A DNA stretch of 64,000 nucleotides. Origin: Raja brachyura. Taxonomy: Eukaryota. The notes under the pieces were generated by a model, which searched no databases, was not told where the DNA came from, and saw only the letters and a list, made by a program, of their open reading frames with translations. Made by a program: the position numbers and the translations under genes. The stretch lies in NCBI GenBank assembly GCA_963514005.1, contig OY740795.1, forward strand, positions 4,960,001 through 5,024,000. Reading direction: 5' to 3'. Each line of letters opens with the position of its first letter. The first letter of the stretch is position 1. Below are positions 955 to 42,630 of this stretch, in pieces.

Positions 955-1112
955 CTTAATCGTCGTTGTCAATGCGCCGTATATGGTACTGATCATAAAG
1001 AGGATCACGAAGGCGATAACTGTTCCTGGAGAATTGGCCTCCTCGTCCATGTATTCTATCATGACGCCATCTGCTGCAGAGTCATGGAGATCTTCTTCTA
1101 TCTTAGGGAATT
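955..1112 (-). CDS. IgNAR: IgNAR transmembrane exon TM1
   Basis: ttctag acceptor, phase 1 matching the C5 internal donor. EFPKIEEDLHDSAADGVMIEYMDEEANSPGTVIAFVILFMISTIYGALTTTIK|GTAACA: acidic spacer, FxxLFxxSxxY core, terminal K with phase-0 donor. An in-frame alternative acceptor (gcag|ATGGC, ~1070) is possible. Confidence 0.88.
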
Positions 1113-7052: not shown

Positions 7053-7435
7053 TTAGATGCACGATTTAAAACTGTCGGTCAGAACGAGTGACACATTAAC
7101 TAAAGTAGGTTTACCGTGAGTCTTATTGATACTTCTGACTAAATTCGTTGCGAGGGACGGGTGTCCAACCAAACAGGTAAAGGTGGTCCCCTTCTCCCAG
7201 TCATCAGCAGTTACTTTTAATTTGCTGGCAACTGAGCTGGAGCCGTTTTCCTTGTCTGTGTCAAGTTGGATGGTGTAACCAGAATCCAAAAGGGTGTCGT
7301 TGGCCATCCAGGCGACGTATATGTCTGACGGGTAAAACCCGGTGGCGAGGCAAACTATTGTGGCAACTTTCTCGGCTTGAATCTGTTCCGGTGATGGGTG
7401 CAGCAGGTAGACTTTAGGACGTTCCATTTCGGTAA
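7053..7435 (-). CDS. IgNAR: IgNAR C5 exon plus secretory tailpiece (tail 7053-7114; internal donor after 7115 for the membrane form)
   Basis: tttccag acceptor. VTEMERPKVYLLHPS...WMANDTLLDSGY...CLVGHPSL...INKTH G|GTAAAC, then tail GKPTLVNVSLVLTDSFKSCI* with NVS sequon and penultimate Cys. Confidence 0.96.
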
Positions 7436-8341: not shown

Positions 8342-8662
8342 CCTTGGAGCTTGTCGTGGAGACTTTCACTGGCGTTGGCAGATCATTGTCTTCTACGAAG
8401 CACAGGTATTCAACCCCACTCTCCCACTCTTCGACGCTGACCTGCAGCTTGCTGACGATGACAGATTTACTTCCCCTCCACTCAGGATCCCGAGTCTGTA
8501 CTCCTTCCATTATCAGACTCCCATTCACTCGCCACGAGACCTTGACGTTCTGCAAATCGGTGTAAACTACTTCACAAACAATTGTTGCTCTCTGAAGTGT
8601 CCAGATCTCCTCAAATGAAGGTGTTTGTATAGCAGCATTGATGTCAACCACATTGCAGTCTT
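8342..8662 (-). CDS. IgNAR: IgNAR constant domain C4 exon
   Basis: ttttgccag acceptor, GTAAGC donor, 321 nt. EDCNVVDI...FEEIWTLQRATIVCEVVY...PEWRGSKSVIVSKL...LPTPVK; keeps the extra N-terminal Cys at the C3/C4 junction (likely inter-chain bond). Confidence 0.95.
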
Positions 8663-13234: not shown

Positions 13235-13552
13235 CTTTCGTGATCCGGATGCTTCGCTTCAGGATAGATTGTGAAGGGAGGTGCGTGGCTACACATGAGT
13301 ATGTTGCTCCTTTCTTCCAATCGGCTGGTGTCAAAAAGAGAAGGCTCTTTGCGCTGAACGTCTTGTCCTGTTCCAGCGCCGCGGGGATGTTGGTAGCGTT
13401 AGAGCGGAATGCGGCTCCGTCTTTCTCCCAGGATACAGTCATATCGTTTGGATAGAATTCTGTGATCAAACATGTCAGTGTCGCGGTGTTAGCACTTTGA
13501 ATCTCCTCCGGAGATGGCGGCAAGAGACGGATTGTTGGTTGCACTGGTTTGG
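13235..13552 (-). CDS. IgNAR: IgNAR constant domain C3 exon
   Basis: cctag acceptor, GTAAAG donor, 318 nt. AKPVQPTIRLLPPSPEEIQSANTATLTCLI...ALEQDKTFS...YSCVATH...RITK. Confidence 0.95.
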
Positions 13553-14951: not shown

Positions 14952-15254
14952 CTTTAGCCTTCCGTGTCCGCTGTGATACCGGAGTAGCTGAATGATGGTC
15001 CCGCGCCGAGCACGAGTACTCCACTCCGCTGTCCCATTCTGCGAGGTTGCTGGTCAAGCGGCCGATCGTCAGGTACTGGTTCCCGGCCTTGGTTGCTTGA
15101 TCGGCTTGAATACCAGCAACTCTTTCCTTTCCATCCACTGTCCAAGAGATCGCAACTTCAGTCGGAGCTGTGGAGATCACTTCGCAGACCAGTGTCGCAG
15201 TTTTGTTGATCCAAATTTCTTCGACGGTGGGATCTCTGAGAAGTATTGCGAGGT
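14952..15254 (-). CDS. IgNAR: IgNAR constant domain C2 exon
   Basis: ttgccag acceptor, GTTCGT donor, 303 nt. DLAILLRDPTVEEIWINKTATLVCEV...EWDSGVEYSCSA...RTRKAK; LLRDPTVEEIW is characteristic of IgNAR C2. Confidence 0.95.
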
Positions 15255-15647: not shown

Positions 15648-15965
15648 CTGACGTCGTTTGAATGTCTTTTTGGACGGTGCTGCCGGTTGCAGAATGGGAT
15701 ACTTGGCAGGAGTATCGGGAACCGCTGGCCCAATCGTTAAACTGCACTTTGAACACACTAGTCGAGGTAAACGTTCCGTCTGCAGTTTCAGCTGGGGGCG
15801 CAGTGGTAAAACCGGATGCGGCCTGTCCGTTTTTCAGCCAGTTCACCCTGATGTCTTGGGGCTGATATTCGCCGATGAGACAAATCAGTTCGACTAAACC
15901 CTTTGCCTTTTGTTCGTCAGATGCAGAGTAGAGGAGGTTGATGATTGGTGGCGTCGGTTTTTTTC
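15648..15965 (-). CDS. IgNAR: IgNAR constant domain C1 exon
   Basis: ttcag acceptor, GTAAAG donor, 318 nt, phase 1-1. GKKPTPPIINLLYSASDEQKAKGLVELICLI...W...YSCQVSHSATGSTVQKDIQTTS resembles shark IgNAR C1. Confidence 0.95.
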
Positions 15966-22387: not shown

Positions 22388-24010
22388 CTAGACCAACGCG
22401 CGGTTGCGGGGGCTGTGGCGTCACGAACACACTAACTATCGTCCGCACACACAGGGGAGAAAGGGGGGGGGGAGAGGAGGGGGGGCGAGGGGAAAGTGGG
22501 AGGGGTGTAGCGAAGGGAGTGGGGGATGGGGAGGGGGAGGGGGAGGGGAGTGGGTGAAGGGAGTGGGTGAGGGGAGTGGGGAGAGAGGAGGGGGAGATGG
22601 GGAAAGTGGAGGGGGTGAGAGTGGGGTGTAGGGGAGTGGGAGGAGAAGGAGGGAAGGGAGGTAGGGGGGATTGGGAGAGGGGGAGATGTAGGGGCAGAGG
22701 GGGCAGAGGGGGGGGGAGTGGGGTGTGGAGAGAGAGGAGGGGGAGAGAGGGGGGTGGGGAGAGTAGGATAATACGAGTTTTATATATATACTAGACCAAG
22801 GGGGACCCGTTGGGTCCCGTCCCCTGAACGTGCGGCTGCGGGGGCTGCGGCGTCACGCACACACTAACCATCGCTCGCACACACAGGGGGGGGGGGAGGG
22901 GGAGGTAGAGGAGGGGGGGCGGTGGGAAAGTGGGAGGGGAGTAGCGGAGGGGAATGGGGGATGGGAATGGGGAGGGGGAGGGGAGTGGGTGAAGGGAGTG
23001 TGTGAGGGGACTGGGAAGAGAGGAGGGGGGCGATGGGGGAAAGTGGAGGGGGTGAGAGTGGGGTGTGGGGGAGTGGGAGGAGAGGGAGAGAGGAGGGGGA
23101 GAGACGGGGAGTGGAGGGAGTGGGCGTTGTTGGGGGGAGATGGGGACTGGAGGGGGGCAGAGGCGGGATGGTTAGAGAGAGGAGGGGGGGCATAGGGGAG
23201 CGAGAGGGGGAGAGTGGGGAGTGGGGGAGAGGGGGAGGGAGGGCAGGGGAGGTGAGAGGGGACAGGGGGAGGTGGAGGGAAGGGGCAGGGGGGGGAAGGG
23301 GCAGAGGGGGGAAGGGGGCGAGAAAGGAGGGGATAGACGGGCAGGAAGGGGGACAGAGGGGAAGTGCGGGAGTTGGGGGAAGGTATGGGGAAGGGGTGGA
23401 GGGGGGAAGGGAGAGAGCAGGGGGATTGGAGGGGAGGGGAGTGGGGCTGGATGGGAGGGGGAGAAAGGAAGGGGAGGGGGCAAACGGAGGGGAGGGAATC
23501 GGATTGGAGGGGAGGGGAGTGTAGGGCTGGAGGGGGGCAGGGGGATTATAGGGGAGGGGAGTGTGGGGCTGGAGGGGGGCAGAGGGGGGAGGGGAGAGAG
23601 AAAGGGAAGAGATGGGGAGGAAGGGGGGAGAGAGAGGGGGGAGCGAGGGAGGAGAGGGGAGGAGGGGGCGAGGGGGGTGAGGAGGAGGGGGGCGGCAAAG
23701 AGGAAGGGGAGAGGTGGAAGGGTATGGGGAGTGGAGGGGGGGTAGAGAGGGGGGCATAGAGAGGGAGAGAGAGGAGTGGGAGAGAGGGGTAGAGGTGGGG
23801 TGATAGAGGTGGGGAAGAGGGGAGGGGAGGGGCGTGAGGGAGAGGGCGGGAGGAGGGGTAGCGAGGAGAGGGGAGAGAAGGAGGGAGAAGAGGGGAGGAT
23901 GTGAGAAGAGGAGGGGGGGGGTGATGTGGAGGAGAGCCCGGCGAGTGAGTGGGCAGCGAAAAGCAGTGAGAGAGATAACAGGCATCACATACAAGAAAGC
24001 ACATCGTAAA
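22388..24010 (-). mobile_element. Helitron-like non-autonomous element ends (tandem) with long G-rich low-complexity body
   Basis: On - strand, hairpin GGGACCC-AAC-GGGTCCC (22802-22818) followed by CTAG|T (22791-22794) in a (TA)n run. Second CTAG end at 22388-22391 lacks the hairpin. 5' end probably lost in the gap. Confidence 0.6.
22454..23925 (+). repeat. Purine/G-rich low-complexity tract (GGGA/GGGGA-type units)
   Basis: Near-continuous G/A runs; source of the spurious Pro-, Gly- and Arg-rich ORFs. Confidence 0.95.
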
Positions 24011-24259
24011 NNNNNNNNNNNNNNNNNNNNNNNNNNNNNNNNNNNNNNNNNNNNNNNNNNNNNNNNNNNNNNNNNNNNNNNNNNNNNNNNNNNNNNNNNN
24101 NNNNNNNNNNNNNNNNNNNNNNNNNNNNNNNNNNNNNNNNNNNNNNNNNNNNNNNNNNNNNNNNNNNNNNNNNNNNNNNNNNNNNNNNNNNNNNNNNNNN
24201 NNNNNNNNNNNNNNNNNNNNNNNNNNNNNNNNNNNNNNNNNNNNNNNNNNNNNNNNNNN
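24011..24259. other. Assembly gap in the J-C1 intron
   Basis: Run of N. Confidence 1.
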
Positions 24260-25252
24260 ATTCGATGCCGTGAGCTACTCAGAAGCAATGACATGTCTTC
24301 CATTAAACTGTGCAATGCAACTTATCTTCTGATCGATTGTAATACGTTGTGAATTGACCGAGAAACATTTGGTTAGGGGAGGATAGAACCAGGATATTTT
24401 TATGTCCTGTTTTGTGAATGCTGCATTGAGCATGTTATTATATTCAGTGCATCTTCTTCGTTTATATGTAGAACTATATTTAACACACCACGAAAAACCT
24501 CGAACACTCCGTATATCAACGCTGAAATAGAACCGGCATGATCACTTGCATTAGCGACTGAAAACTTGAAAGTATATCACCAGCTGCTTTATTTTGAGCT
24601 AAACGCGCGGAATGAAATTATAAGTCATGTTTTTAATTTCTGAAGAGCAGATTATTTCCCCCATTGCAGAAAGTAAACATATTTTTCCCAACGAAGGTCT
24701 GCTTGGCAATTCCCCTGACTATAAGTTGACGAAATGCTGTTTAAATGTCTATTGATTTCAGTCTTCACTGGCGCTCAATGCCCATTCAAGGTTTTATGTC
24801 ACCCGCACCAAAACAAACACAGACTCCTCATTTGAGAGTCCATGTTTCCTATGTATAAACCTATAATGGTCGCGCCTGTTAGTTAATTCAAACTCCAATA
24901 TGTCAACATATAAATACCTATTTTGATAATTATACTGCAACAACTGTTATCGGGTACGTTATCGGGGGTTGTAACGAGAAGTGGTGTACGAGGAAAATTT
25001 GTGGATTTCGTTTTGCAAAATTACATTTTTGTTGAGTTACCCTTTGGACCAGTTGAGGAATGTAATATCATGTTTATATTTAAGCCAACTAAACTGACAG
25101 AGAATAAATCCAATATTCCAAAAATACACTATCATTCACAATTCACACCAGTTAATTGATAATCTAAACCATTCTTATCACTTGAGCGACAAAAAAACCC
25201 AACGGAATACCAAAGTGAAAGTATTAAAATATCCCAAAAAAAGGTCACTTAC

Positions 25253-25293
25253 CAGGTTTCACAGTCAGCGTTGTGCCAGCTCCATACTAGTCA
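25253..25293 (-). CDS. IgNAR: IgNAR J segment, D-*-YGAGTTLTVKP, with an in-frame TAG near its 5' end
   Basis: T GAC TAG TAT GGA GCT GGC ACA ACG CTG ACT GTG AAA CCT G|GTAAGT. YGxGT motif; phase-1 donor matches C1. Confidence 0.95.
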
Positions 25294-25332
25294 CACAGTG
25301 ATTCACTTCCTCGTAAGCCCAGGACAAACATT
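25294..25332 (-). other. J 5' recombination signal (23-bp spacer)
   Basis: Plus-strand CACAGTG (25294-25300), 23-nt spacer, ACAAACATT (25324-25332). Confidence 0.88.
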
Positions 25333-25645
25333 GTAATTAAAGATAAGGTGTTGCAATAGGTTCTCCAAAATGATATAACTACAAAAAAAAATTGATGCGT
25401 TGCGGTCGGTAAAATCATTCGTTGTTTCCTTCAGTGTTCATCCTTATGATCTTAACTTTTCCCCTGATCGTTATATATTGCAATACCATGTCGTGTGGTC
25501 GGGAAAACGGAATTCCGTTGATTCAAGAGGGGGAATGTGGTTACATTGGAAACAAAGAAGAAAATTTAATTTGACACCATATCCAACAATATCTGTGAGC
25601 ATAAAGACCCCATTCACGGATGGGGCACCAATACACTGCTGAAGA

Positions 25646-25713
25646 TGTTTTTGTTATGGCTTGAGCTGCTGTGTATGGTACTCCACACATCATTTCACAT
25701 GAGCACAAAAACT
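25646..25713 (-). other. IgNAR: D2 segment (25674-25685, TGGAGTACCATA) with 12-RSS on both sides
   Basis: V-side CACATCA-12-ACAAAAACT (25686-25713); J-side CACAGCA-12-ACAAAAACA (25646-25673). Frames WSTI / GVP / EYH. Confidence 0.88.
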
Positions 25714-26036
25714 CCACTGTTGAAAATGGTGCTTAAACTCCTCCAGATATTCCACATTTTGTATCGAATGTTGCAGCGGAAGCGGTTGTTTCGTTGTTTT
25801 GACAACTTAGTATCCAGTAGATCATTATAACTCTTACCCACTCAAGGTATTTTGGTAAATATCAACGTTCTGTTTTGAATACGACGGTAGCATTTATATA
25901 ACGATCACGAAGTATACGGAGATAAAACTCTGATATGTCGAGCAGTTCTTGGCAAAATCAATGGGTATTTGGCAATTGCGGTTTCAATTGCTGAAGAAAT
26001 GTTTCGTATTCATTTTGCATTAAGAAGTTCTGGGGC

Positions 26037-26116
26037 GCTTTATGTATTACGGGAATTGAAGATTCGTCACTGTGTCCCGTATGCTGTACACAGTGGTAAA
26101 GCCCAGCACAATAATA
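26037..26116 (-). other. IgNAR: D1 segment (26075-26088, TACAGCATACGGGA) with 5' 12-RSS and 3' 22-RSS
   Basis: Two consensus heptamers (26089-26095 and 26068-26074). V-side: 12-nt spacer, nonamer ACAATAATA. J-side: 22-nt spacer, nonamer ACATAAAGC. Frames YSIR / TAYG / QHTG. Confidence 0.93.
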
Positions 26117-26305
26117 GACCCACCTGCGCAACTCGTTAAACAACGACACTGCACATCCAACTCTCCCGACTTCGGCATGTCCCGCATATCACCACTCATT
26201 GCCAATCTGCCATCGTCCTACACAGGATTCAGCAGCTACTTTGGTAATTTTATGTTCAATTAAAGTGAAGCGACTCGTGATTTCTTCAGAGAAAGAGAAG
26301 CACAG

Positions 26306-26343
26306 TATTTTTGTATTGCATCAGCTACAGGTTAACTACAGTG
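26306..26343 (-). other. V 3' recombination signal (22-bp spacer)
   Basis: Heptamer CACTGTA (26337-26343), 22-nt spacer, nonamer ACAAAAATA (26306-26314), abutting the V coding end. Confidence 0.92.
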
Positions 26344-26606
26344 TCTTCTGCAGGTGTACGTGGCCGTGTCTTCAACGACCAGATTCCTGATCTGCAGGGA
26401 AAATGATTTTTGTCGGCTGTTGACTGTTTCAACGTATCGTCCTCCAATCGTTAGGCTCTCCCTCGATTGACCCGGTTTTTGCCGGAACCAATATGTGCTA
26501 CCAAGCGCGTAGCTGCTATCACGTAAAGCGCAATTGATGGTCAGAGTTTCGCCGGATTCTTTTGTTGCCGACCTCGGTGTTTGTTCAACATATTCACTGT
26601 AGGCAT
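26344..26606 (-). CDS. IgNAR: IgNAR V segment (VNAR), germline; only the two canonical Cys
   Basis: ttcag acceptor; (N)[87 protein letters not shown]. Has the VNAR hallmarks: [18 protein letters not shown], and no CDR2. Confidence 0.97.
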
Positions 26607-26741
26607 CTGAAGAGGGAAACACCATATTTAATACATTGCTTATTTGAAATAATGTGAGATTCAACACATAATGACAGTCGCACAAGGTGGACGTACTGCA
26701 CAATTTCAATTAATAATATTTTAAAATCAAACTGCACTCAC

Positions 26742-26784
26742 TCGATAACCAGGCCAAAAGTATTGAAACACAAAAAATATTCAT
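26742..26784 (-). CDS. IgNAR: IgNAR leader exon, MNIFCVSILLAWLS + 1 nt
   Basis: 43-nt exon from ATG to a phase-1 GTGAGT donor. Resembles the MNIFLLSVLLAWLP-type IgNAR leader. Too short to appear in the ORF track. Confidence 0.93.
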
Positions 26785-26876
26785 GTTTTTTTCACGATAA
26801 AACAATGGTTAAGCAGAGAGGGTACTGGACCTCAGCGTCCACTGTCTGTGTAACAATGCGGCTCTCAACGAAGACC

Positions 26877-26883
26877 TTATAAA
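26877..26883 (-). promoter_or_regulatory. TATA-like element (TTTATAA) of the IgNAR V promoter
   Basis: Lies between the octamer and the ATG, at typical Ig-promoter spacing. Confidence 0.6.
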
Positions 26884-26901
26884 CCTCAAGAGTCCGAGCT
26901 C

Positions 26902-26909
26902 ATTTGCAT
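26902..26909 (-). promoter_or_regulatory. Ig promoter octamer ATGCAAAT (heavy-chain orientation)
   Basis: Perfect ATGCAAAT on the sense (-) strand, ~118 bp upstream of the leader ATG and ~19 bp upstream of a TATA-like element. Confidence 0.85.
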
Positions 26910-27049
26910 AAAGGCGTTGTGAAACTGCACTGACTGCAAATACATTTCGGGTGATAGCAAAACATACGTCCACCTTTTCTAGCTATCTATTCGCTGGAAT
27001 CTGCAGTGTATTGACGTGAATATGTTGGCAGAGATATAGAAAATGTTCT

Positions 27050-38095: not shown

Positions 38096-40034
38096 GACTG
38101 AATGTCCACGGCCCGAACTACGTGTTCAAAACCAACCCGGAATGTTCGTGATTTCATTGTTTGCTTTTAAATTCCAACATAAGGTTGGATGGCATAATCC
38201 AATCCAACATATCAGTGGAAAGAACGATATCTATTAAGCCTTCCACTGTTCCGCAGTAAAACATAATGCATTCCTTGAGATCGCGGTGGCCATTATTGAA
38301 TAGGACTTGTGGCCTTTCTCCACGATCCTTTTAATCAGTGTAGAATTAAAACCCACCCACAGATTGAAACCCACCCACGGAGCCTAAAGAAGGGTTCCGA
38401 CACGAAACGTCGTCTGTCCCTTCCCTCTCAAGATGCCGTCTGACATGTTGAGTTTCATTAGCACTATGAATTTTGTTCAACATTCCAGCATCTGAAACTT
38501 ATATTCTCCATTTAGTTGCTCCACTGCTAAATATCTTTTAACTACTTGAATAAGTTCTACTCTCTCCACCGGGTATTCTGAGACCATATCTTGCTGCTCC
38601 CCTCTGTAATTTCTGCTACTGAGTCTGAAGAAAGATTGTGTATCGACGCGTTGTCTCCATATTTCCCTCTACGGGTCCTGGCCCACTGACTTTTGTAACA
38701 CTTCTGTCTTTTGCCGTTGAACTGGAAGTTAAATCCTCGAGTTTCGTCGTCAGATATCTCTTCCAACAATGTTACCTGGGCTCAGCTGTAATTTATTGAA
38801 AGCGACCTGGAACCAGGGCGAGAGCATTGGGGAAAACGAGACATTGAAAAGTCAGGACATATATAAGTACTCAGCAAGAGTCAACGAAGAGTTGCCAATT
38901 ATCGACCCATTCTCTGAAAAAACGTGACAGAGAATGAACATTCAAACAGATACCAGATGCTCAACACTGGAAAAATAATTTATGGCAAAAAGTAAAGGCA
39001 CTTTGCAGGACCAATGGGGCACTTTGCAGGACAAAGGGTACTTTGCAGGACAAAAGCAAATCCGCCAAAGGAAACGTCACATTCCTTTTCTCCAGAGATG
39101 CTGTCTGCCATTGTTATACATTTTGGTTTTACCATGTAGAAATTACAGCTGTGTTTATAGAGGGCACAAGAATGTTTGGGACACATGGCTTCATAGATGA
39201 TTGTAATTGCTCAGGTGTGTTTAAAATTCCTCCTTAATGCTGGTATAAGAGATCTATCAGCACCTAGTCATTCCTCGAGTCTTTCCATCATCTTTGGAAA
39301 CTTTTATTGTTGTTTATCAACATGAGGACCAAATTTGTGCCGACGAAAGTCAAATAAGCCATTATGAGACTGAGAAAAAAAAAACCTGTTAGAGACATCA
39401 GCCAAACCTTAGGCTTACCAAAATCAATTGTTTGGAAGGTCATTAAGAAGGAAGAGAGCACTGGTGAGCTTACTACCTTAACTCCTGTCCGACAAATTAA
39501 AAGCATTCTTCAGGTGTCATGAGTGGATTTATAAATGACCTCTGCCGCAGAATACTTCATGAACAGGAATACAGAGGCTACACAGCAAGATGCAAACCAC
39601 TGGTTCACCGCAAAAATAGGATGGCCAGGTTGCAGTTTGCCAAGAAGTACCAAAAAGGGCAACCACAGTTCTGGAAAAATGTCTTGTGGACAGATGAGAC
39701 GAAGATTAACTTACATCAGAGTATGGAGGAGAGAAGGAACGGCCCAAGATCCAAAGCATGCCACCTCATCTGTGAAACACGGTGGTGGGGGCGTTATGGC
39801 CTGGGCATGTACAGCTGCTGAAGGCACTGGCTCACTTATCCTCGTTGATGATACAACTGCTGATGGTAGTAGCATAATGAATTTTGATTTGCGTGGACAG
39901 GTCCGATTTGCTCAATTTCAAACAAATGCGTCAAAACTCATTGGCCGGCGGTTTATTCTACAGCAAGCTAATGACCCCACACAAATTGCTAATAACAAAG
40001 GAGCTTATCAAAGCTATAAAAAGGTCAATTCTTG

Positions 40035-41624: not shown

Positions 41625-42630
41625 AAAATTTAAACTCCTTACTGAACCGCACGTCAAGAAGCTTGGCGTGATATTTGACTCCACATTAAAGTTTGACAAA
41701 CAAGTCAATGCTGTGGTAAAAACTAGCTTCTTCCAGCTTCGCACGATAGCTAGAATTAAACCATTCCTCCAATTCGACGACCTTGAAAAGATCATCCACG
41801 CATTTATCTCCTCCCGCATTGACTACTGCAACTCCCTATACACTGACATCAGCCAATCAACCCTAATTGGTCCAAACATCGCAGCGAGACTTCTGACAGG
41901 TACCAGTAAAAGGGACCATATCACCCCGATTCTGGCCTCTCTCCACCAGCTCCCAGTACGTTACAGAATCAATTTAAAGCTCCTCATACATGTATACAAC
42001 GCCCTTAATGGCTTAACCCCACCTATATCAAAAATCTGCCAACCCACCATTCTACCTCCAGGTCCATCAGGTCGGCCGACTTGGGGCTACTGACTATCCC
42101 GCGGTCCAGGTTTAACCTCAGGGGTGACCGCGCTCTTGCGGTTGCAGCAACTAGACTGTGGAGCAACATTCCTCTTCTCATCAGAACTGATCCCTCCGTA
42201 GAGTCCTTTAAGTCTAGACTTGAACCTATTTCTACTCAGAAGCGTTTCTTGAGGTNNNNNNNNNNNNNNNNNNNNNNNNNNNNNNNNNNNNNNNNNNNNN
42301 NNNNNNNNNNNNNNNNNNNNNNNNNNNNNNNNNNNNNNNNNNNNNNNNNNNNNNNNNNNNNNNNNNNNNNNNNNNNNNNNNNNNNNNNNNNNNNNNNNNN
42401 NNNNNNNNNNNNNNNNNNNNNNNNNNNNNNNNNNNNNNNNNNNNNNNNNNNNNNNNNNNNNNNNNNNNNNNNNNNNNNNNNNNNNNNNNNNNNNNNNNNN
42501 NNNNNNNNNNNNNNNNNNNNNNNCATTGGATGTTACACGTTAGTACCTGCGCTGATGCAAAGCATTTTAATCAACGAGAGTTGTTTTCAAATGTGGTACA
42601 GAAATAAAATTGACTTGACTTGACCTGATT
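41625..42630 (+). mobile_element. L2-clade LINE 3' fragment spanning the gap
   Basis: LGVIFDSTLKFDKQVNAVVKTSFFQLRTIARIK...HAFISSRIDYCNSL...RDHITPILASLH; (TTGAC)n tail after the gap. Confidence 0.8.
42256..42523. other. Assembly gap
   Basis: Run of N. Confidence 1.

What the first reader, a model, noticed from the sequence alone, without database searches (positions are those of the whole stretch)
25253..26606. IgNAR cluster with only two D segments, in an IgM-like RSS layout
Seen: the gap-free V-J interval reads V-22 / 12-D1-22 / 12-D2-12 / 23-J. I found no further heptamer-spacer-nonamer pair at 26117-26305, 25714-26036 or 25333-25645. Known: nurse-shark IgNAR clusters have three D segments (four joins, long CDR3); two Ds is the elasmobranch IgM pattern, and type III IgNAR reaches two by germline D-D joining. 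Inference: this is a lineage-specific two-D IgNAR, by loss, germline fusion or ancestral retention. D1 is only 14 nt, which argues weakly against fusion. It should give shorter CDR3s: at most ~39 germline nt between the V Cys and YGAG.
Basis: partly seen in the sequence, partly recalled or inferred. Interest (0 to 1): 0.78.

Follow-up and report, generated by a model that had tools for sequence, protein, structure and literature searches.

The report
Skate IgNAR gene with two Ds
This is a complete, unrearranged gene cluster for the shark-type single-chain antibody IgNAR from a skate-like fish. It carries two diversity (D) segments where sharks have three, so it should make shorter antigen-binding loops.

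Summary
On the minus strand lies a complete germline IgNAR cluster: octamer, split leader, V, D1 (14 nt), D2 (12 nt), J, five C exons and a TM exon.

In my paired-RSS score (maximum 32), D1 scores 27 and D2 scores 25. The next candidate in the V-J interval scores 19. The best of 300 shuffled intervals scored 23. Nothing else in the 64 kb reaches 25. I found no third D and no relic of one.

A 2,439-nt contig from a different organism label, about 92% identical, spans the whole V-J interval colinearly (1,511 vs 1,508 nt). Pieces from three further organism labels cover the D1 or D2 unit without large indels. The layout therefore looks fixed in the lineage and is not an assembly slip.

The closest deposited protein is a VNAR of the skate Okamejei kenojei (82% identity). 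It has only 11 residues between the V Cys and GAG.

An in-frame TAG in J lowers the usable germline CDR3 maximum from 39 to about 34 nt. Novelty is uncertain, because a 2023 paper on skate IgNAR could not be read.

The parts
26902..26909 (-). Ig octamer ATGCAAAT upstream of the leader, with a TATA-like TTTATAAGG at 26883-26875
   Evidence: read directly; that this motif marks Ig promoters is established knowledge (recalled)
26742..26784 (-). leader exon 1 (ATG at 26784; donor A|GTGAGT, phase 1)
   Evidence: read; with the V exon it gives an 18-residue leader beginning MNIF, as in nurse-shark NAR P0005
26344..26606 (-). V exon: last 4 leader codons plus an 84-residue VNAR V region ending ...TYTCRR
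   Evidence: translation; Pfam V-set 1e-13; VNAR structures 8ht3_A 2.5e-40 and 1sq2_N 8e-32; 82% identity to the Okamejei kenojei VNAR
26306..26343 (-). V recombination signal: heptamer CACTGTA, 22-nt spacer, nonamer ACAAAAATA
26089..26116 (-). D1 5' signal with 12-nt spacer (heptamer 7/7, nonamer 6/9)
26075..26088 (-). D1, 14 nt, TACAGCATACGGGA; no Cys codon in any forward frame
   Evidence: unit score 27/32 against a null maximum of 23
26037..26074 (-). D1 3' signal with 22-nt spacer (heptamer 7/7, nonamer 7/9); the only RSS in the 64 kb scoring 14/16
25686..25713 (-). D2 5' signal with 12-nt spacer (heptamer 4/7 with CAC kept, nonamer 8/9)
25674..25685 (-). D2, 12 nt, TGGAGTACCATA; no Cys codon
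   Evidence: unit score 25/32; relatives differ at 25681 and 25682
25646..25673 (-). D2 3' signal with 12-nt spacer (heptamer 5/7, nonamer 8/9)
25294..25332 (-). J signal with 23-nt spacer (heptamer 7/7, nonamer 6/9; all four relatives' runs read A at 25329, which gives 7/9)
25253..25293 (-). J segment, ...YGAGTTLTVKP, donor G|GTAAGT; in-frame TAG at 25289-25287
   Evidence: read
15648..15965 (-). C1 exon
   Evidence: ORF; Pfam C1-set 2.5e-19; phase-1 splice sites
14952..15254 (-). C2 exon
   Evidence: (C1-set 1.4e-10)
13235..13552 (-). C3 exon
   Evidence: (C1-set 2.9e-21)
8342..8662 (-). C4 exon
   Evidence: best solved match 2mkl_C 'Novel antigen receptor', E 9.4e-39
7056..7435 (-). C5 exon with secretory tail; internal donor at 7115 for splicing to the TM exon
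   Evidence: (C1-set 1.3e-20)
955..1112 (-). TM1 exon (acidic stretch, then a hydrophobic span ending ...TTTIK)
   Evidence: hydrophobicity scan; sequence and splice sites read

Best explanation
This is a complete, apparently functional germline IgNAR minilocus of a skate-like batoid. It spans about 26 kb on the minus strand, and its variable exon is built from V, two Ds and J.

By the 12/23 rule the signals allow three deletional RAG joins: V(22) to D1(12), D1(22) to D2(12), and D2(12) to J(23).
- V(22) can also join D2(12) directly, so D1 can be skipped.
- V-J and D1-J joins are forbidden, so D2 is obligatory.
- D2 has 12-signals on both sides, so it could also be used inverted.

There are three junctions where sharks have four. 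At most about 34 germline nt are usable between the V Cys codon and the J Tyr codon. V, D1, D2 and J carry no germline non-canonical cysteine codon. The cluster should therefore yield short, type-IV-like CDR3 loops.

The two-D layout is a fixed feature of this lineage's IgNAR. It is neither a recent germline D-D fusion nor an assembly error.

Shown: the anatomy, the signal scores, the absence of a third unit, and colinearity in a relative. Inferred: the rearrangement behaviour, the CDR3 outcome, and function.
For: - **Anatomy and signals:**
- **Paired-signal scores:** D1 27 and D2 25, against a next best of 19. 0 of 300 resampled intervals reached 25, with a maximum of 23. Nothing else in the 64 kb on either strand reaches 25.
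- **IgNAR identity:** VNAR structures are the best matches. Sequence relatives found were 5 of 5 candidates, all VNAR/NAR; the best was the Okamejei kenojei VNAR at 82% identity. There are five C1-set exons. The C4 exon matches 2mkl_C 'Novel antigen receptor' at 9.4e-39. Phase-1 splice sites, a secretory tail and a TM1 exon are present.
- **Conservation:** contig record 9 of run X17 (organism E) covers 25161-26668 as 1,511 nt against 1,508 nt, with 112 other letters and 15 gaps. A 411-nt contig of X8 covers the D2 unit (25383-25786) without gaps. A 189-nt contig of X11 covers the D1 unit (25982-26169) with 1 gap. X4 has depth in 30 of 30 bins. No joints were reported in any of the 4 runs.
- **No relic of a third unit:** the three intersegment intervals show no similarity above shuffles (203, 48 and 109 of 300 shuffles score as high). 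Only chance-level short repeats were found.
- **Segment spacing:** 255, 389 and 380 nt. This resembles the 'about 400 bp' of nurse-shark IgM clusters (PMC2435157, passages read).
- **Short CDR3 in a skate VNAR:** P0001 has 11 residues between Cys and GAG.
Against: - No transcript or rearranged DNA was seen. No listed run is on record as RNA, so use of the segments is inferred.
- The D2 heptamers are weak (4/7 and 5/7).
- J carries an in-frame TAG one codon before Tyr, so productive joins need at least 5 nt of J removed.
- The J nonamer has a C at 25329 where all four relatives' runs read A.
- The cross-species evidence is from assembled contigs of coded organisms, and only 40 of 258 differences were shown. 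I cannot say that every signal is intact in the relatives.
- The single Okamejei VNAR is a crystallised clone, not a repertoire.
- The second cluster in this genome is known to me only from an unchecked note.
Confidence: 0.8

Rival explanations
1. Ancestral retention. Two Ds in the V-23/12-D-23/12-D-12/23-J layout is the original IgNAR state, shared with IgM and IgW clusters. Sharks gained the third D by tandem duplication of a 12-D-23 unit after they split from batoids.
For: - The layout needs only one added 12-D-23 unit to become the layout I recall for shark IgNAR; this is sequence logic applied.
- IgM clusters of sharks and skates have two Ds (PMC2435157, passages).
- Both Ds here are short, and nothing hints at a lost unit.
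Against: No outgroup was examined here. All genomic IgNAR descriptions I could read (nurse shark, bamboo shark) give three Ds. Absence of a relic after roughly hundreds of millions of years is uninformative.
Confidence: 0.3
2. Loss from a three-D ancestor without fusion. Unequal crossing-over or a plain deletion removed one 12-D-23 unit, leaving Ds of normal length.
For: - Three Ds is the state in every shark cluster described in the papers read (PMC4622739, PMC4279169, PMC8692893).
- Two tandem 12-D-23 units are a natural substrate for unequal exchange (inference).
- D lengths of 14 and 12 nt fit unfused segments.
Against: No trace of the event was found. With present data this is as hard to distinguish from retention as the reverse.
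Confidence: 0.3
3. Germline RAG-mediated D-D fusion, as in nurse-shark type III IgNAR or the pre-joined Ds of bamboo shark. One of the present Ds is a joined pair.
For: - Either fusion (D1-D2 or D2-D3) would leave exactly the signal layout seen; this is logic.
- Germline joining is well documented in cartilaginous fish (PMC2193156, PMC4622739, PMC8692893, passages).
Against: - D1 is 14 nt and D2 is 12 nt, which is short for a join of two segments unless both were heavily trimmed.
- Neither D carries a Cys codon.
- The V has only two cysteines, the canonical pair. It lacks the extra CDR1 Cys and CDR1 Trp that PMC4622739 gives for type III.
- The layout is shared by a relative about 8% diverged, so any fusion would be old.
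Confidence: 0.15
4. A third D exists in the interval but has signals too degenerate for a consensus scan, or the assembly collapsed two similar D units into one.
For: My scan uses simple match counts, not a trained RSS model. The D2 heptamers show that weak heptamers are tolerated here.
Against: - The best remaining unit scores 19/32, below the mean best score of shuffled sequence (19.9).
- Loosened thresholds gave only noise.
- An independent contig of another organism has the same interval length.
- The interval has no internal repeats that could collapse.
Confidence: 0.04
5. The cluster is a decaying pseudogene, so its D number has no bearing on the expressed repertoire.
For: An in-frame TAG in J, weak D2 heptamers, a J nonamer poorer than in the relatives, and no RNA evidence.
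Against: - The leader, V, five C exons, the secretory tail and TM1 are all open with canonical phase-1 splice sites.
- The octamer and a TATA-like box are present.
- The TAG sits in the part of J that nuclease trimming commonly removes (established knowledge, recalled).
Confidence: 0.1

Closest known systems
Shark IgNAR clusters (nurse shark; whitespotted bamboo shark IgNAR1, 2, 5, 6)
   Same: - One V, one J, five C exons, a secretory tail and TM in a self-contained cluster.
- A VNAR-type V; 22-nt spacers also occur there (PMC8692893 figure legend).
- The V here is 63-68% identical to shark VNARs.
   Different: Shark clusters have three D segments and four joins (PMC4622739, PMC4279169, PMC8692893, passages read). 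This one has two Ds and three joins, and no germline non-canonical cysteine.
Nurse-shark type III IgNAR and bamboo-shark clusters with pre-joined Ds
   Same: Effectively two D units and three rearrangements (PMC4622739). A fusion would leave the same signal layout.
   Different: In those clusters the reduction comes from germline D-D joining. Here both Ds are short (14 and 12 nt), neither has a Cys codon, and the V lacks the extra CDR1 Cys and CDR1 Trp that PMC4622739 describes for type III.
Elasmobranch IgM (and IgW) heavy-chain miniloci, VH-D1-D2-JH
   Same: Two Ds, with segments a few hundred bp apart (PMC2435157: 'about 400 bp'; here 255, 389 and 380 nt). I recall the same signal layout for IgM; no call checked it.
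   Different: V and C are IgNAR, not IgM: VNAR matches, five C exons, and C4 matches an IgNAR C domain. There is no light-chain partner by analogy (inference).
Okamejei kenojei VNAR (PDB 8HT3; protein P0001)
   Same: Closest deposited sequence: 82% identity over the V. No non-canonical cysteines. 11 residues between Cys and GAG, and the same ...LTVKP ending to framework 4.
   Different: It is a rearranged protein of another species, with one more residue before GAG in the J part. One contig variant of run X8 has a 3-nt insertion at the matching place (after 25284).
NAR-TcR V (the NAR-type V on shark TCR delta)
   Same: A related V family, genetically linked to IgNAR in the antigen-receptor complex (PMC12227049, passages). 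An unchecked scan note places RSS-bearing TCR V segments about 499 kb before this window.
   Different: Here the J is followed by Ig C exons with secretory and TM ends, not by a TCR delta V. That NAR-TcR has a single D is my recollection only.

Membership tests
IgNAR heavy-chain cluster | V domain of the VNAR type (single-domain V, colinear with solved VNARs) | tested here: met
   phmmer against PDB: 8ht3_A 2.5e-40 and 1sq2_N 8e-32, colinear with one 1-residue gap. The first 30 listed matches are VNAR or nanobody-named shark domains. Pfam V-set 1e-13.
IgNAR heavy-chain cluster | Five constant-domain exons with IgNAR-type C domains, a secretory tail and TM exons | tested here: met
   Five C1-set exons. 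C4 matches 2mkl_C 'Novel antigen receptor' at 9.4e-39. A secretory tail follows C5, with an internal TM donor at 7115. TM1 is at 1112-955. The C1 exon search was uninformative because multi-domain heavy chains came first.
IgNAR heavy-chain cluster | Self-contained V-(D)n-J with 12/23-compatible signals upstream of its own C exons | tested here: met
IgNAR heavy-chain cluster | Three D segments and four joins, as given for shark clusters in reviews | tested here: not met
   Two D units only; the next candidate scores 19/32, at noise level. I treat this as a typical feature of shark IgNAR, not as a feature that defines the isotype. PMC5192425 says 'up to three'.
IgNAR heavy-chain cluster | Expressed as a light-chain-free homodimer | not testable with these tools
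   No RNA or protein data. No listed run is on record as RNA.
Germline-joined (type III-like) IgNAR | A long fused D carrying a Cys codon, plus a CDR1 Cys and an adjacent conserved Trp | tested here: not met
   D1 is 14 nt and D2 is 12 nt, with no TGT or TGC in any forward frame. The V has only the two canonical cysteines. Type III features were taken from PMC4622739 passages.
IgM-type minilocus layout | V-23 / 12-D1-23 / 12-D2-12 / 23-J with two Ds | tested here: met
   Two Ds in IgM is from PMC2435157. The exact IgM spacer layout is recalled and was not shown by a call. This concerns layout only: the V and C are not IgM.

The most novel reading that the evidence does not exclude
Two Ds is the primitive state of IgNAR, inherited with an IgM/IgW-like minilocus frame and kept in batoids. 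The third D, and with it the very long, cysteine-braced CDR3 that made VNARs famous, would then be a later innovation of sharks, made by duplicating one 12-D-23 unit. Skates would show what the first heavy-chain-only antibody looked like: short loops and no extra disulfides.
Probability: 0.3. Interest if true: 0.6.

Novelty: new variant of a known kind. Interest (0 to 1): 0.45.

Why it matters
IgNAR is the textbook case of an antibody whose diversity sits almost wholly in CDR3, and this is credited to three D segments and four joins.

A lineage whose IgNAR has only two unfused Ds tests that idea. It predicts a shorter and less constrained CDR3 repertoire in skates. It also gives a character (D number) that can be mapped across sharks and rays to ask how the locus arose and how the third D was gained or lost.

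There is a practical side too. People who build VNAR libraries from skates and rays should expect short, cysteine-free loops. That affects the epitopes reached and the stability of the binders.

The finding is modest if the 2023 skate IgNAR paper already reports it.

Tried and rejected
**Third D.** Loosened scans (heptamer 3/7 or better, nonamer 4/9 or better, only CA required) gave many weak combinations, none above noise. The ranked unit score put the best extra candidate at 19/32. Two of the three candidates at 19 abut the D1 unit: one lies inside D1's 3' signal and one inside its 5' spacer. The third, at 26300-26280, is free-standing.

**Relic of a lost D unit or tandem-duplication signal.** Pairwise local alignments of the three intersegment intervals were no better than shuffles (203, 48 and 109 of 300 shuffles scored as high). 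The repeat finder gave two short two-copy families and one inverted pair, all chance-level.

**Second Ig cluster in the window.** None of the stop-to-stop ORFs of 85 aa or more elsewhere looked Ig-like beyond the six exons used. Most of the others are transposon-like (by eye).

**IgNAR versus IgW by the C1 exon.** This was uninformative, because long mammalian heavy chains topped the list. The C4 exon settled it.

**Transcripts.** No listed run is on record as RNA, and the runs laid were contigs. D usage and CDR3 length could not be measured.

**More batoid VNAR sequences.** The word-based protein search returned only 5 proteins. I did not run the large representative search: the operators marked it as costly, and the claim does not rest on an absence of relatives.

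**Literature.**
None turned up a statement of two-D IgNAR in batoids.
- One search was badly posed and mostly returned fisheries papers.
- Wen et al. 2023 (Front Mar Sci 10:1183744) covers IgNAR and the VNAR repertoire of Okamejei kenojei. I know it only from the reference lists of PMC11432006 and PMC12138478. It is not held and may already give the germline D number.
- Supplements were closed. Supplementary figure S1A of PMC8692893 bears on cluster numbers in cartilaginous fish. I did not see it, and I do not know whether it covers D counts.

**Species.** Not determined, because the runs' organisms are coded. 'Skate' rests on the nearest protein and on an unchecked scan note.
Full report
**What is there**

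The finding lies on the minus strand. Reading 5' to 3' in gene sense:
- an Ig octamer ATGCAAAT (26909-26902) and a TATA-like box;
- a leader exon (ATG at 26784, donor A|GTGAGT after 26742);
- a 135-nt intron;
- a V exon (26606-26344) whose 84-residue V region ends ...TYTCRR.

Rereading one search showed the donor is phase 1. The leader is then 18 residues and begins MNIF, like the nurse-shark NAR leader in P0005.

**Recombination signals**

| Element | Heptamer | Spacer | Nonamer |
|---|---|---|---|
| V | CACTGTA | 22 | ACAAAAATA |
| D1 5' (D1 = 26088-26075, 14 nt) | 7/7 | 12 | 6/9 |
| D1 3' | 7/7 | 22 | 7/9 |
| D2 5' (D2 = 25685-25674, 12 nt) | 4/7 | 12 | 8/9 |
| D2 3' | 5/7 | 12 | 8/9 |
| J (coding 25293-25253, ...YGAGTTLTVKP, donor G|GTAAGT) | 7/7 | 23 | 6/9 |

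The layout V-22 / 12-D1-22 / 12-D2-12 / 23-J is confirmed.

**Is it more than chance, and is a third D hidden?**

I scored every possible D unit: a 12-type signal on the 5' side, any signal on the 3' side, and 6-40 nt between them. The score is the sum of heptamer and nonamer matches, with a maximum of 32.
- D1 scores 27 and D2 scores 25.
- The best other non-overlapping unit in the 1,050-nt V-J interval scores 19. Two of the three units at 19 abut the D1 unit. One lies inside D1's 3' signal and one inside its 5' spacer. The third (26300-26280) is free-standing.
- In 300 first-order Markov resamples of the interval, the best unit averaged 19.9 (sd 1.1, maximum 23). 0 of 300 reached 25.
- Across the whole window on both strands, only D1 and D2 reach 25 or more. 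The next is 23 at 39006-39031.
- Loosened thresholds only add noise.
- The three intersegment intervals (255, 389 and 380 nt) show no similarity to each other beyond shuffles. The short repeats found are chance-level.

There is therefore no sign of a decayed third unit, and no repeat that an assembler could have collapsed.

**Is it IgNAR?**
- The V matches solved VNAR domains first: 8ht3_A at 2.5e-40 and 1sq2_N at 8e-32.
- The word-based protein search found 5 of 5 candidates, all NAR/VNAR. The best was the VNAR of the skate Okamejei kenojei, at 82% identity.
- Downstream on the same strand are five C1-set exons with phase-1 splice sites: C1 15965-15648, C2 15254-14952, C3 13552-13235, C4 8662-8342, and C5 with its secretory tail at 7435-7056.
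- The C4 exon's best solved match is 2mkl_C, named 'Novel antigen receptor' by its depositors (9.4e-39). The C1 exon search was uninformative.
- An internal donor in C5 (7115) and a TM1 exon at 1112-955 complete the gene.

The cluster spans about 26 kb and lies wholly inside the window.

**Relatives**

No listed run is on record as RNA, so expression and D usage could not be examined. I laid contigs of four runs, from four organism labels other than the likely source, on 25150-26950 at 80% likeness.
- Record 9 of X17 (organism E, 2,439 nt) covers 25161-26668 in one piece: 1,511 nt against 1,508, with 112 other letters and 15 gaps, or about 92% identity.
- A 411-nt contig of X8 covers the whole D2 unit (25383-25786) with 15 other letters and no gap.
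- A 189-nt contig of X11 covers the D1 unit (25982-26169) with 10 other letters and 1 gap.
- X4 has depth in 30 of 30 bins, with 14 of 29 laid contigs at 99% or better.
- No joints were reported in any of the 4 runs.

Limits of this evidence:
- Only 40 of 258 differences and 12 of 41 indels were printed, so I cannot vouch for each signal in each relative.
- X8 has no depth over most of 25821-26125, and X11 has none over 25577-25698. The tool warns that such holes prove nothing.

Listed differences that touch the parts:
- D2 coding at 25681 and 25682.
- The J nonamer at 25329, where all four runs read A, which improves the nonamer.
- A 3-nt insertion after 25284 in one X8 contig, which adds a codon after the J Tyr. 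The Okamejei protein also has one more residue there.
- A second, roughly 90%-alike contig population at the V end (insertions after 26343, 26347 and 26348). It probably comes from a paralogous cluster.

An unchecked note of this scan reports a second IgNAR cluster about 87 kb before the window with the same two-D layout (s1-881428). I could not read that DNA.

**How it most likely works (inferred from the 12/23 rule)**

There are three deletional joins: V to D1, D1 to D2, and D2 to J. V can also join D2 directly, so D1 is optional. V-J and D1-J joins are barred, so D2 is obligatory. With 12-signals on both sides, D2 could also be inverted.

However, the 7 nt of J hold an in-frame TAG (25289-25287). 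At least 5 nt of J must go, leaving about 34 nt, or about 11 codons, before trimming and N addition.

No Cys codon exists in either D in any forward frame, and the V has only the canonical pair. The products should therefore be type-IV-like, in the terms of PMC4622739. The one deposited skate VNAR has 11 residues between Cys and GAG and no extra cysteine. That fits, but it is a single crystallised clone.

**Comparison with what is known**

From passages read:
- Each shark IgNAR cluster has one V, three Ds and one J, needing four joins (PMC4622739, PMC4279169). PMC5192425 says 'up to three'.
- Bamboo shark has four complete clusters of 1V-3D-1J-5C, with pre-joined Ds in three clusters and some 22-nt spacers (PMC8692893).
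- Nurse-shark type III has D1 and D2 fused in the germline, leaving three joins (PMC4622739).
- IgM clusters of sharks and skates have VH, two Ds and JH, about 400 bp apart (PMC2435157).
- A 2026 review still gives 'three D segments' as typical (PMC12907318).

That the IgM signals read V-23 / 12-D1-23 / 12-D2-12 / 23-J is my recollection of the older horned-shark and nurse-shark work, not a result of any call.

This cluster is an IgNAR by V and C, with the D number and signal logic of an IgM-type minilocus. It lacks the marks of a germline fusion.

**Origin**

Three routes remain open:
- retention of an ancestral two-D state, with sharks adding a 12-D-23 unit;
- loss of one such unit by unequal exchange or deletion;
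- an old RAG-mediated germline fusion followed by trimming.

Short D lengths argue against fusion but do not separate retention from loss. Only a survey across batoid and shark orders can decide.

**Novelty**

My ten literature searches found no statement of a two-D IgNAR in batoids. A directly relevant paper could not be read: Wen et al. 2023 on IgNAR and the VNAR repertoire of Okamejei kenojei. I know it only from two reference lists, and it is not held. Supplements were closed.

I therefore rate this as a new variant of a known kind, with perhaps a four-in-ten chance that it is already in print for a skate. Interest is moderate. It is a clean, lineage-level departure from a textbook feature, with clear predictions, but it is not a new kind of system.

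Noticed in passing
25287-25289 (minus strand TAG within J, 25293-25253): In-frame stop codon one codon before the conserved Tyr of J. Any productive join must lose at least 5 nt of J, which lowers the germline CDR3 ceiling from 39 to about 34 nt. The scan has a separate note on it (s1-881083).
   Followed up: partly
25301-25323 and 26096-26107: The 11 nt of the J 23-nt spacer next to its nonamer match the whole 12-nt spacer of the D1 5' signal in the same register, with 8 consecutive identical bases. It looks as if the 23-signal were the 12-signal plus about 12 nt beside the heptamer. As a free local alignment it is not significant (48 of 300 shuffles score as high). The register coincidence was not tested.
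   Followed up: partly
about 22450-23920, next to the assembly gap 24011-24259: A roughly 1.5-kb degenerate purine-rich repeat (GGGGA/GAGGG-type units; GC 0.60 and GC skew +0.70) inside the 9.3-kb J-C1 intron. The G-rich strand is the template strand of the IgNAR gene. That is the opposite of the orientation of tetrapod switch regions (recalled).
   Followed up: partly
26200-26449: Runs X4 and X8 hold a second contig population about 90% alike here, with small insertions at the V end (after 26343, 26347 and 26348). It is probably a paralogous IgNAR cluster with a slightly longer V coding end.
   Followed up: no
25284/25285: One contig variant in run X8 has a 3-nt insertion after 25284, which adds a codon after the J Tyr. 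The Okamejei kenojei VNAR also has one extra residue at that place.
   Followed up: no
27000-64000: The 37 kb upstream of the cluster holds mostly reverse-transcriptase and transposase-like ORF fragments and a second assembly gap (42256-42523). No further Ig exon appears among ORFs of 85 aa or more. The next-best D-like unit of the window (score 23 at 39006-39031) lies here and looks like chance.
   Followed up: no
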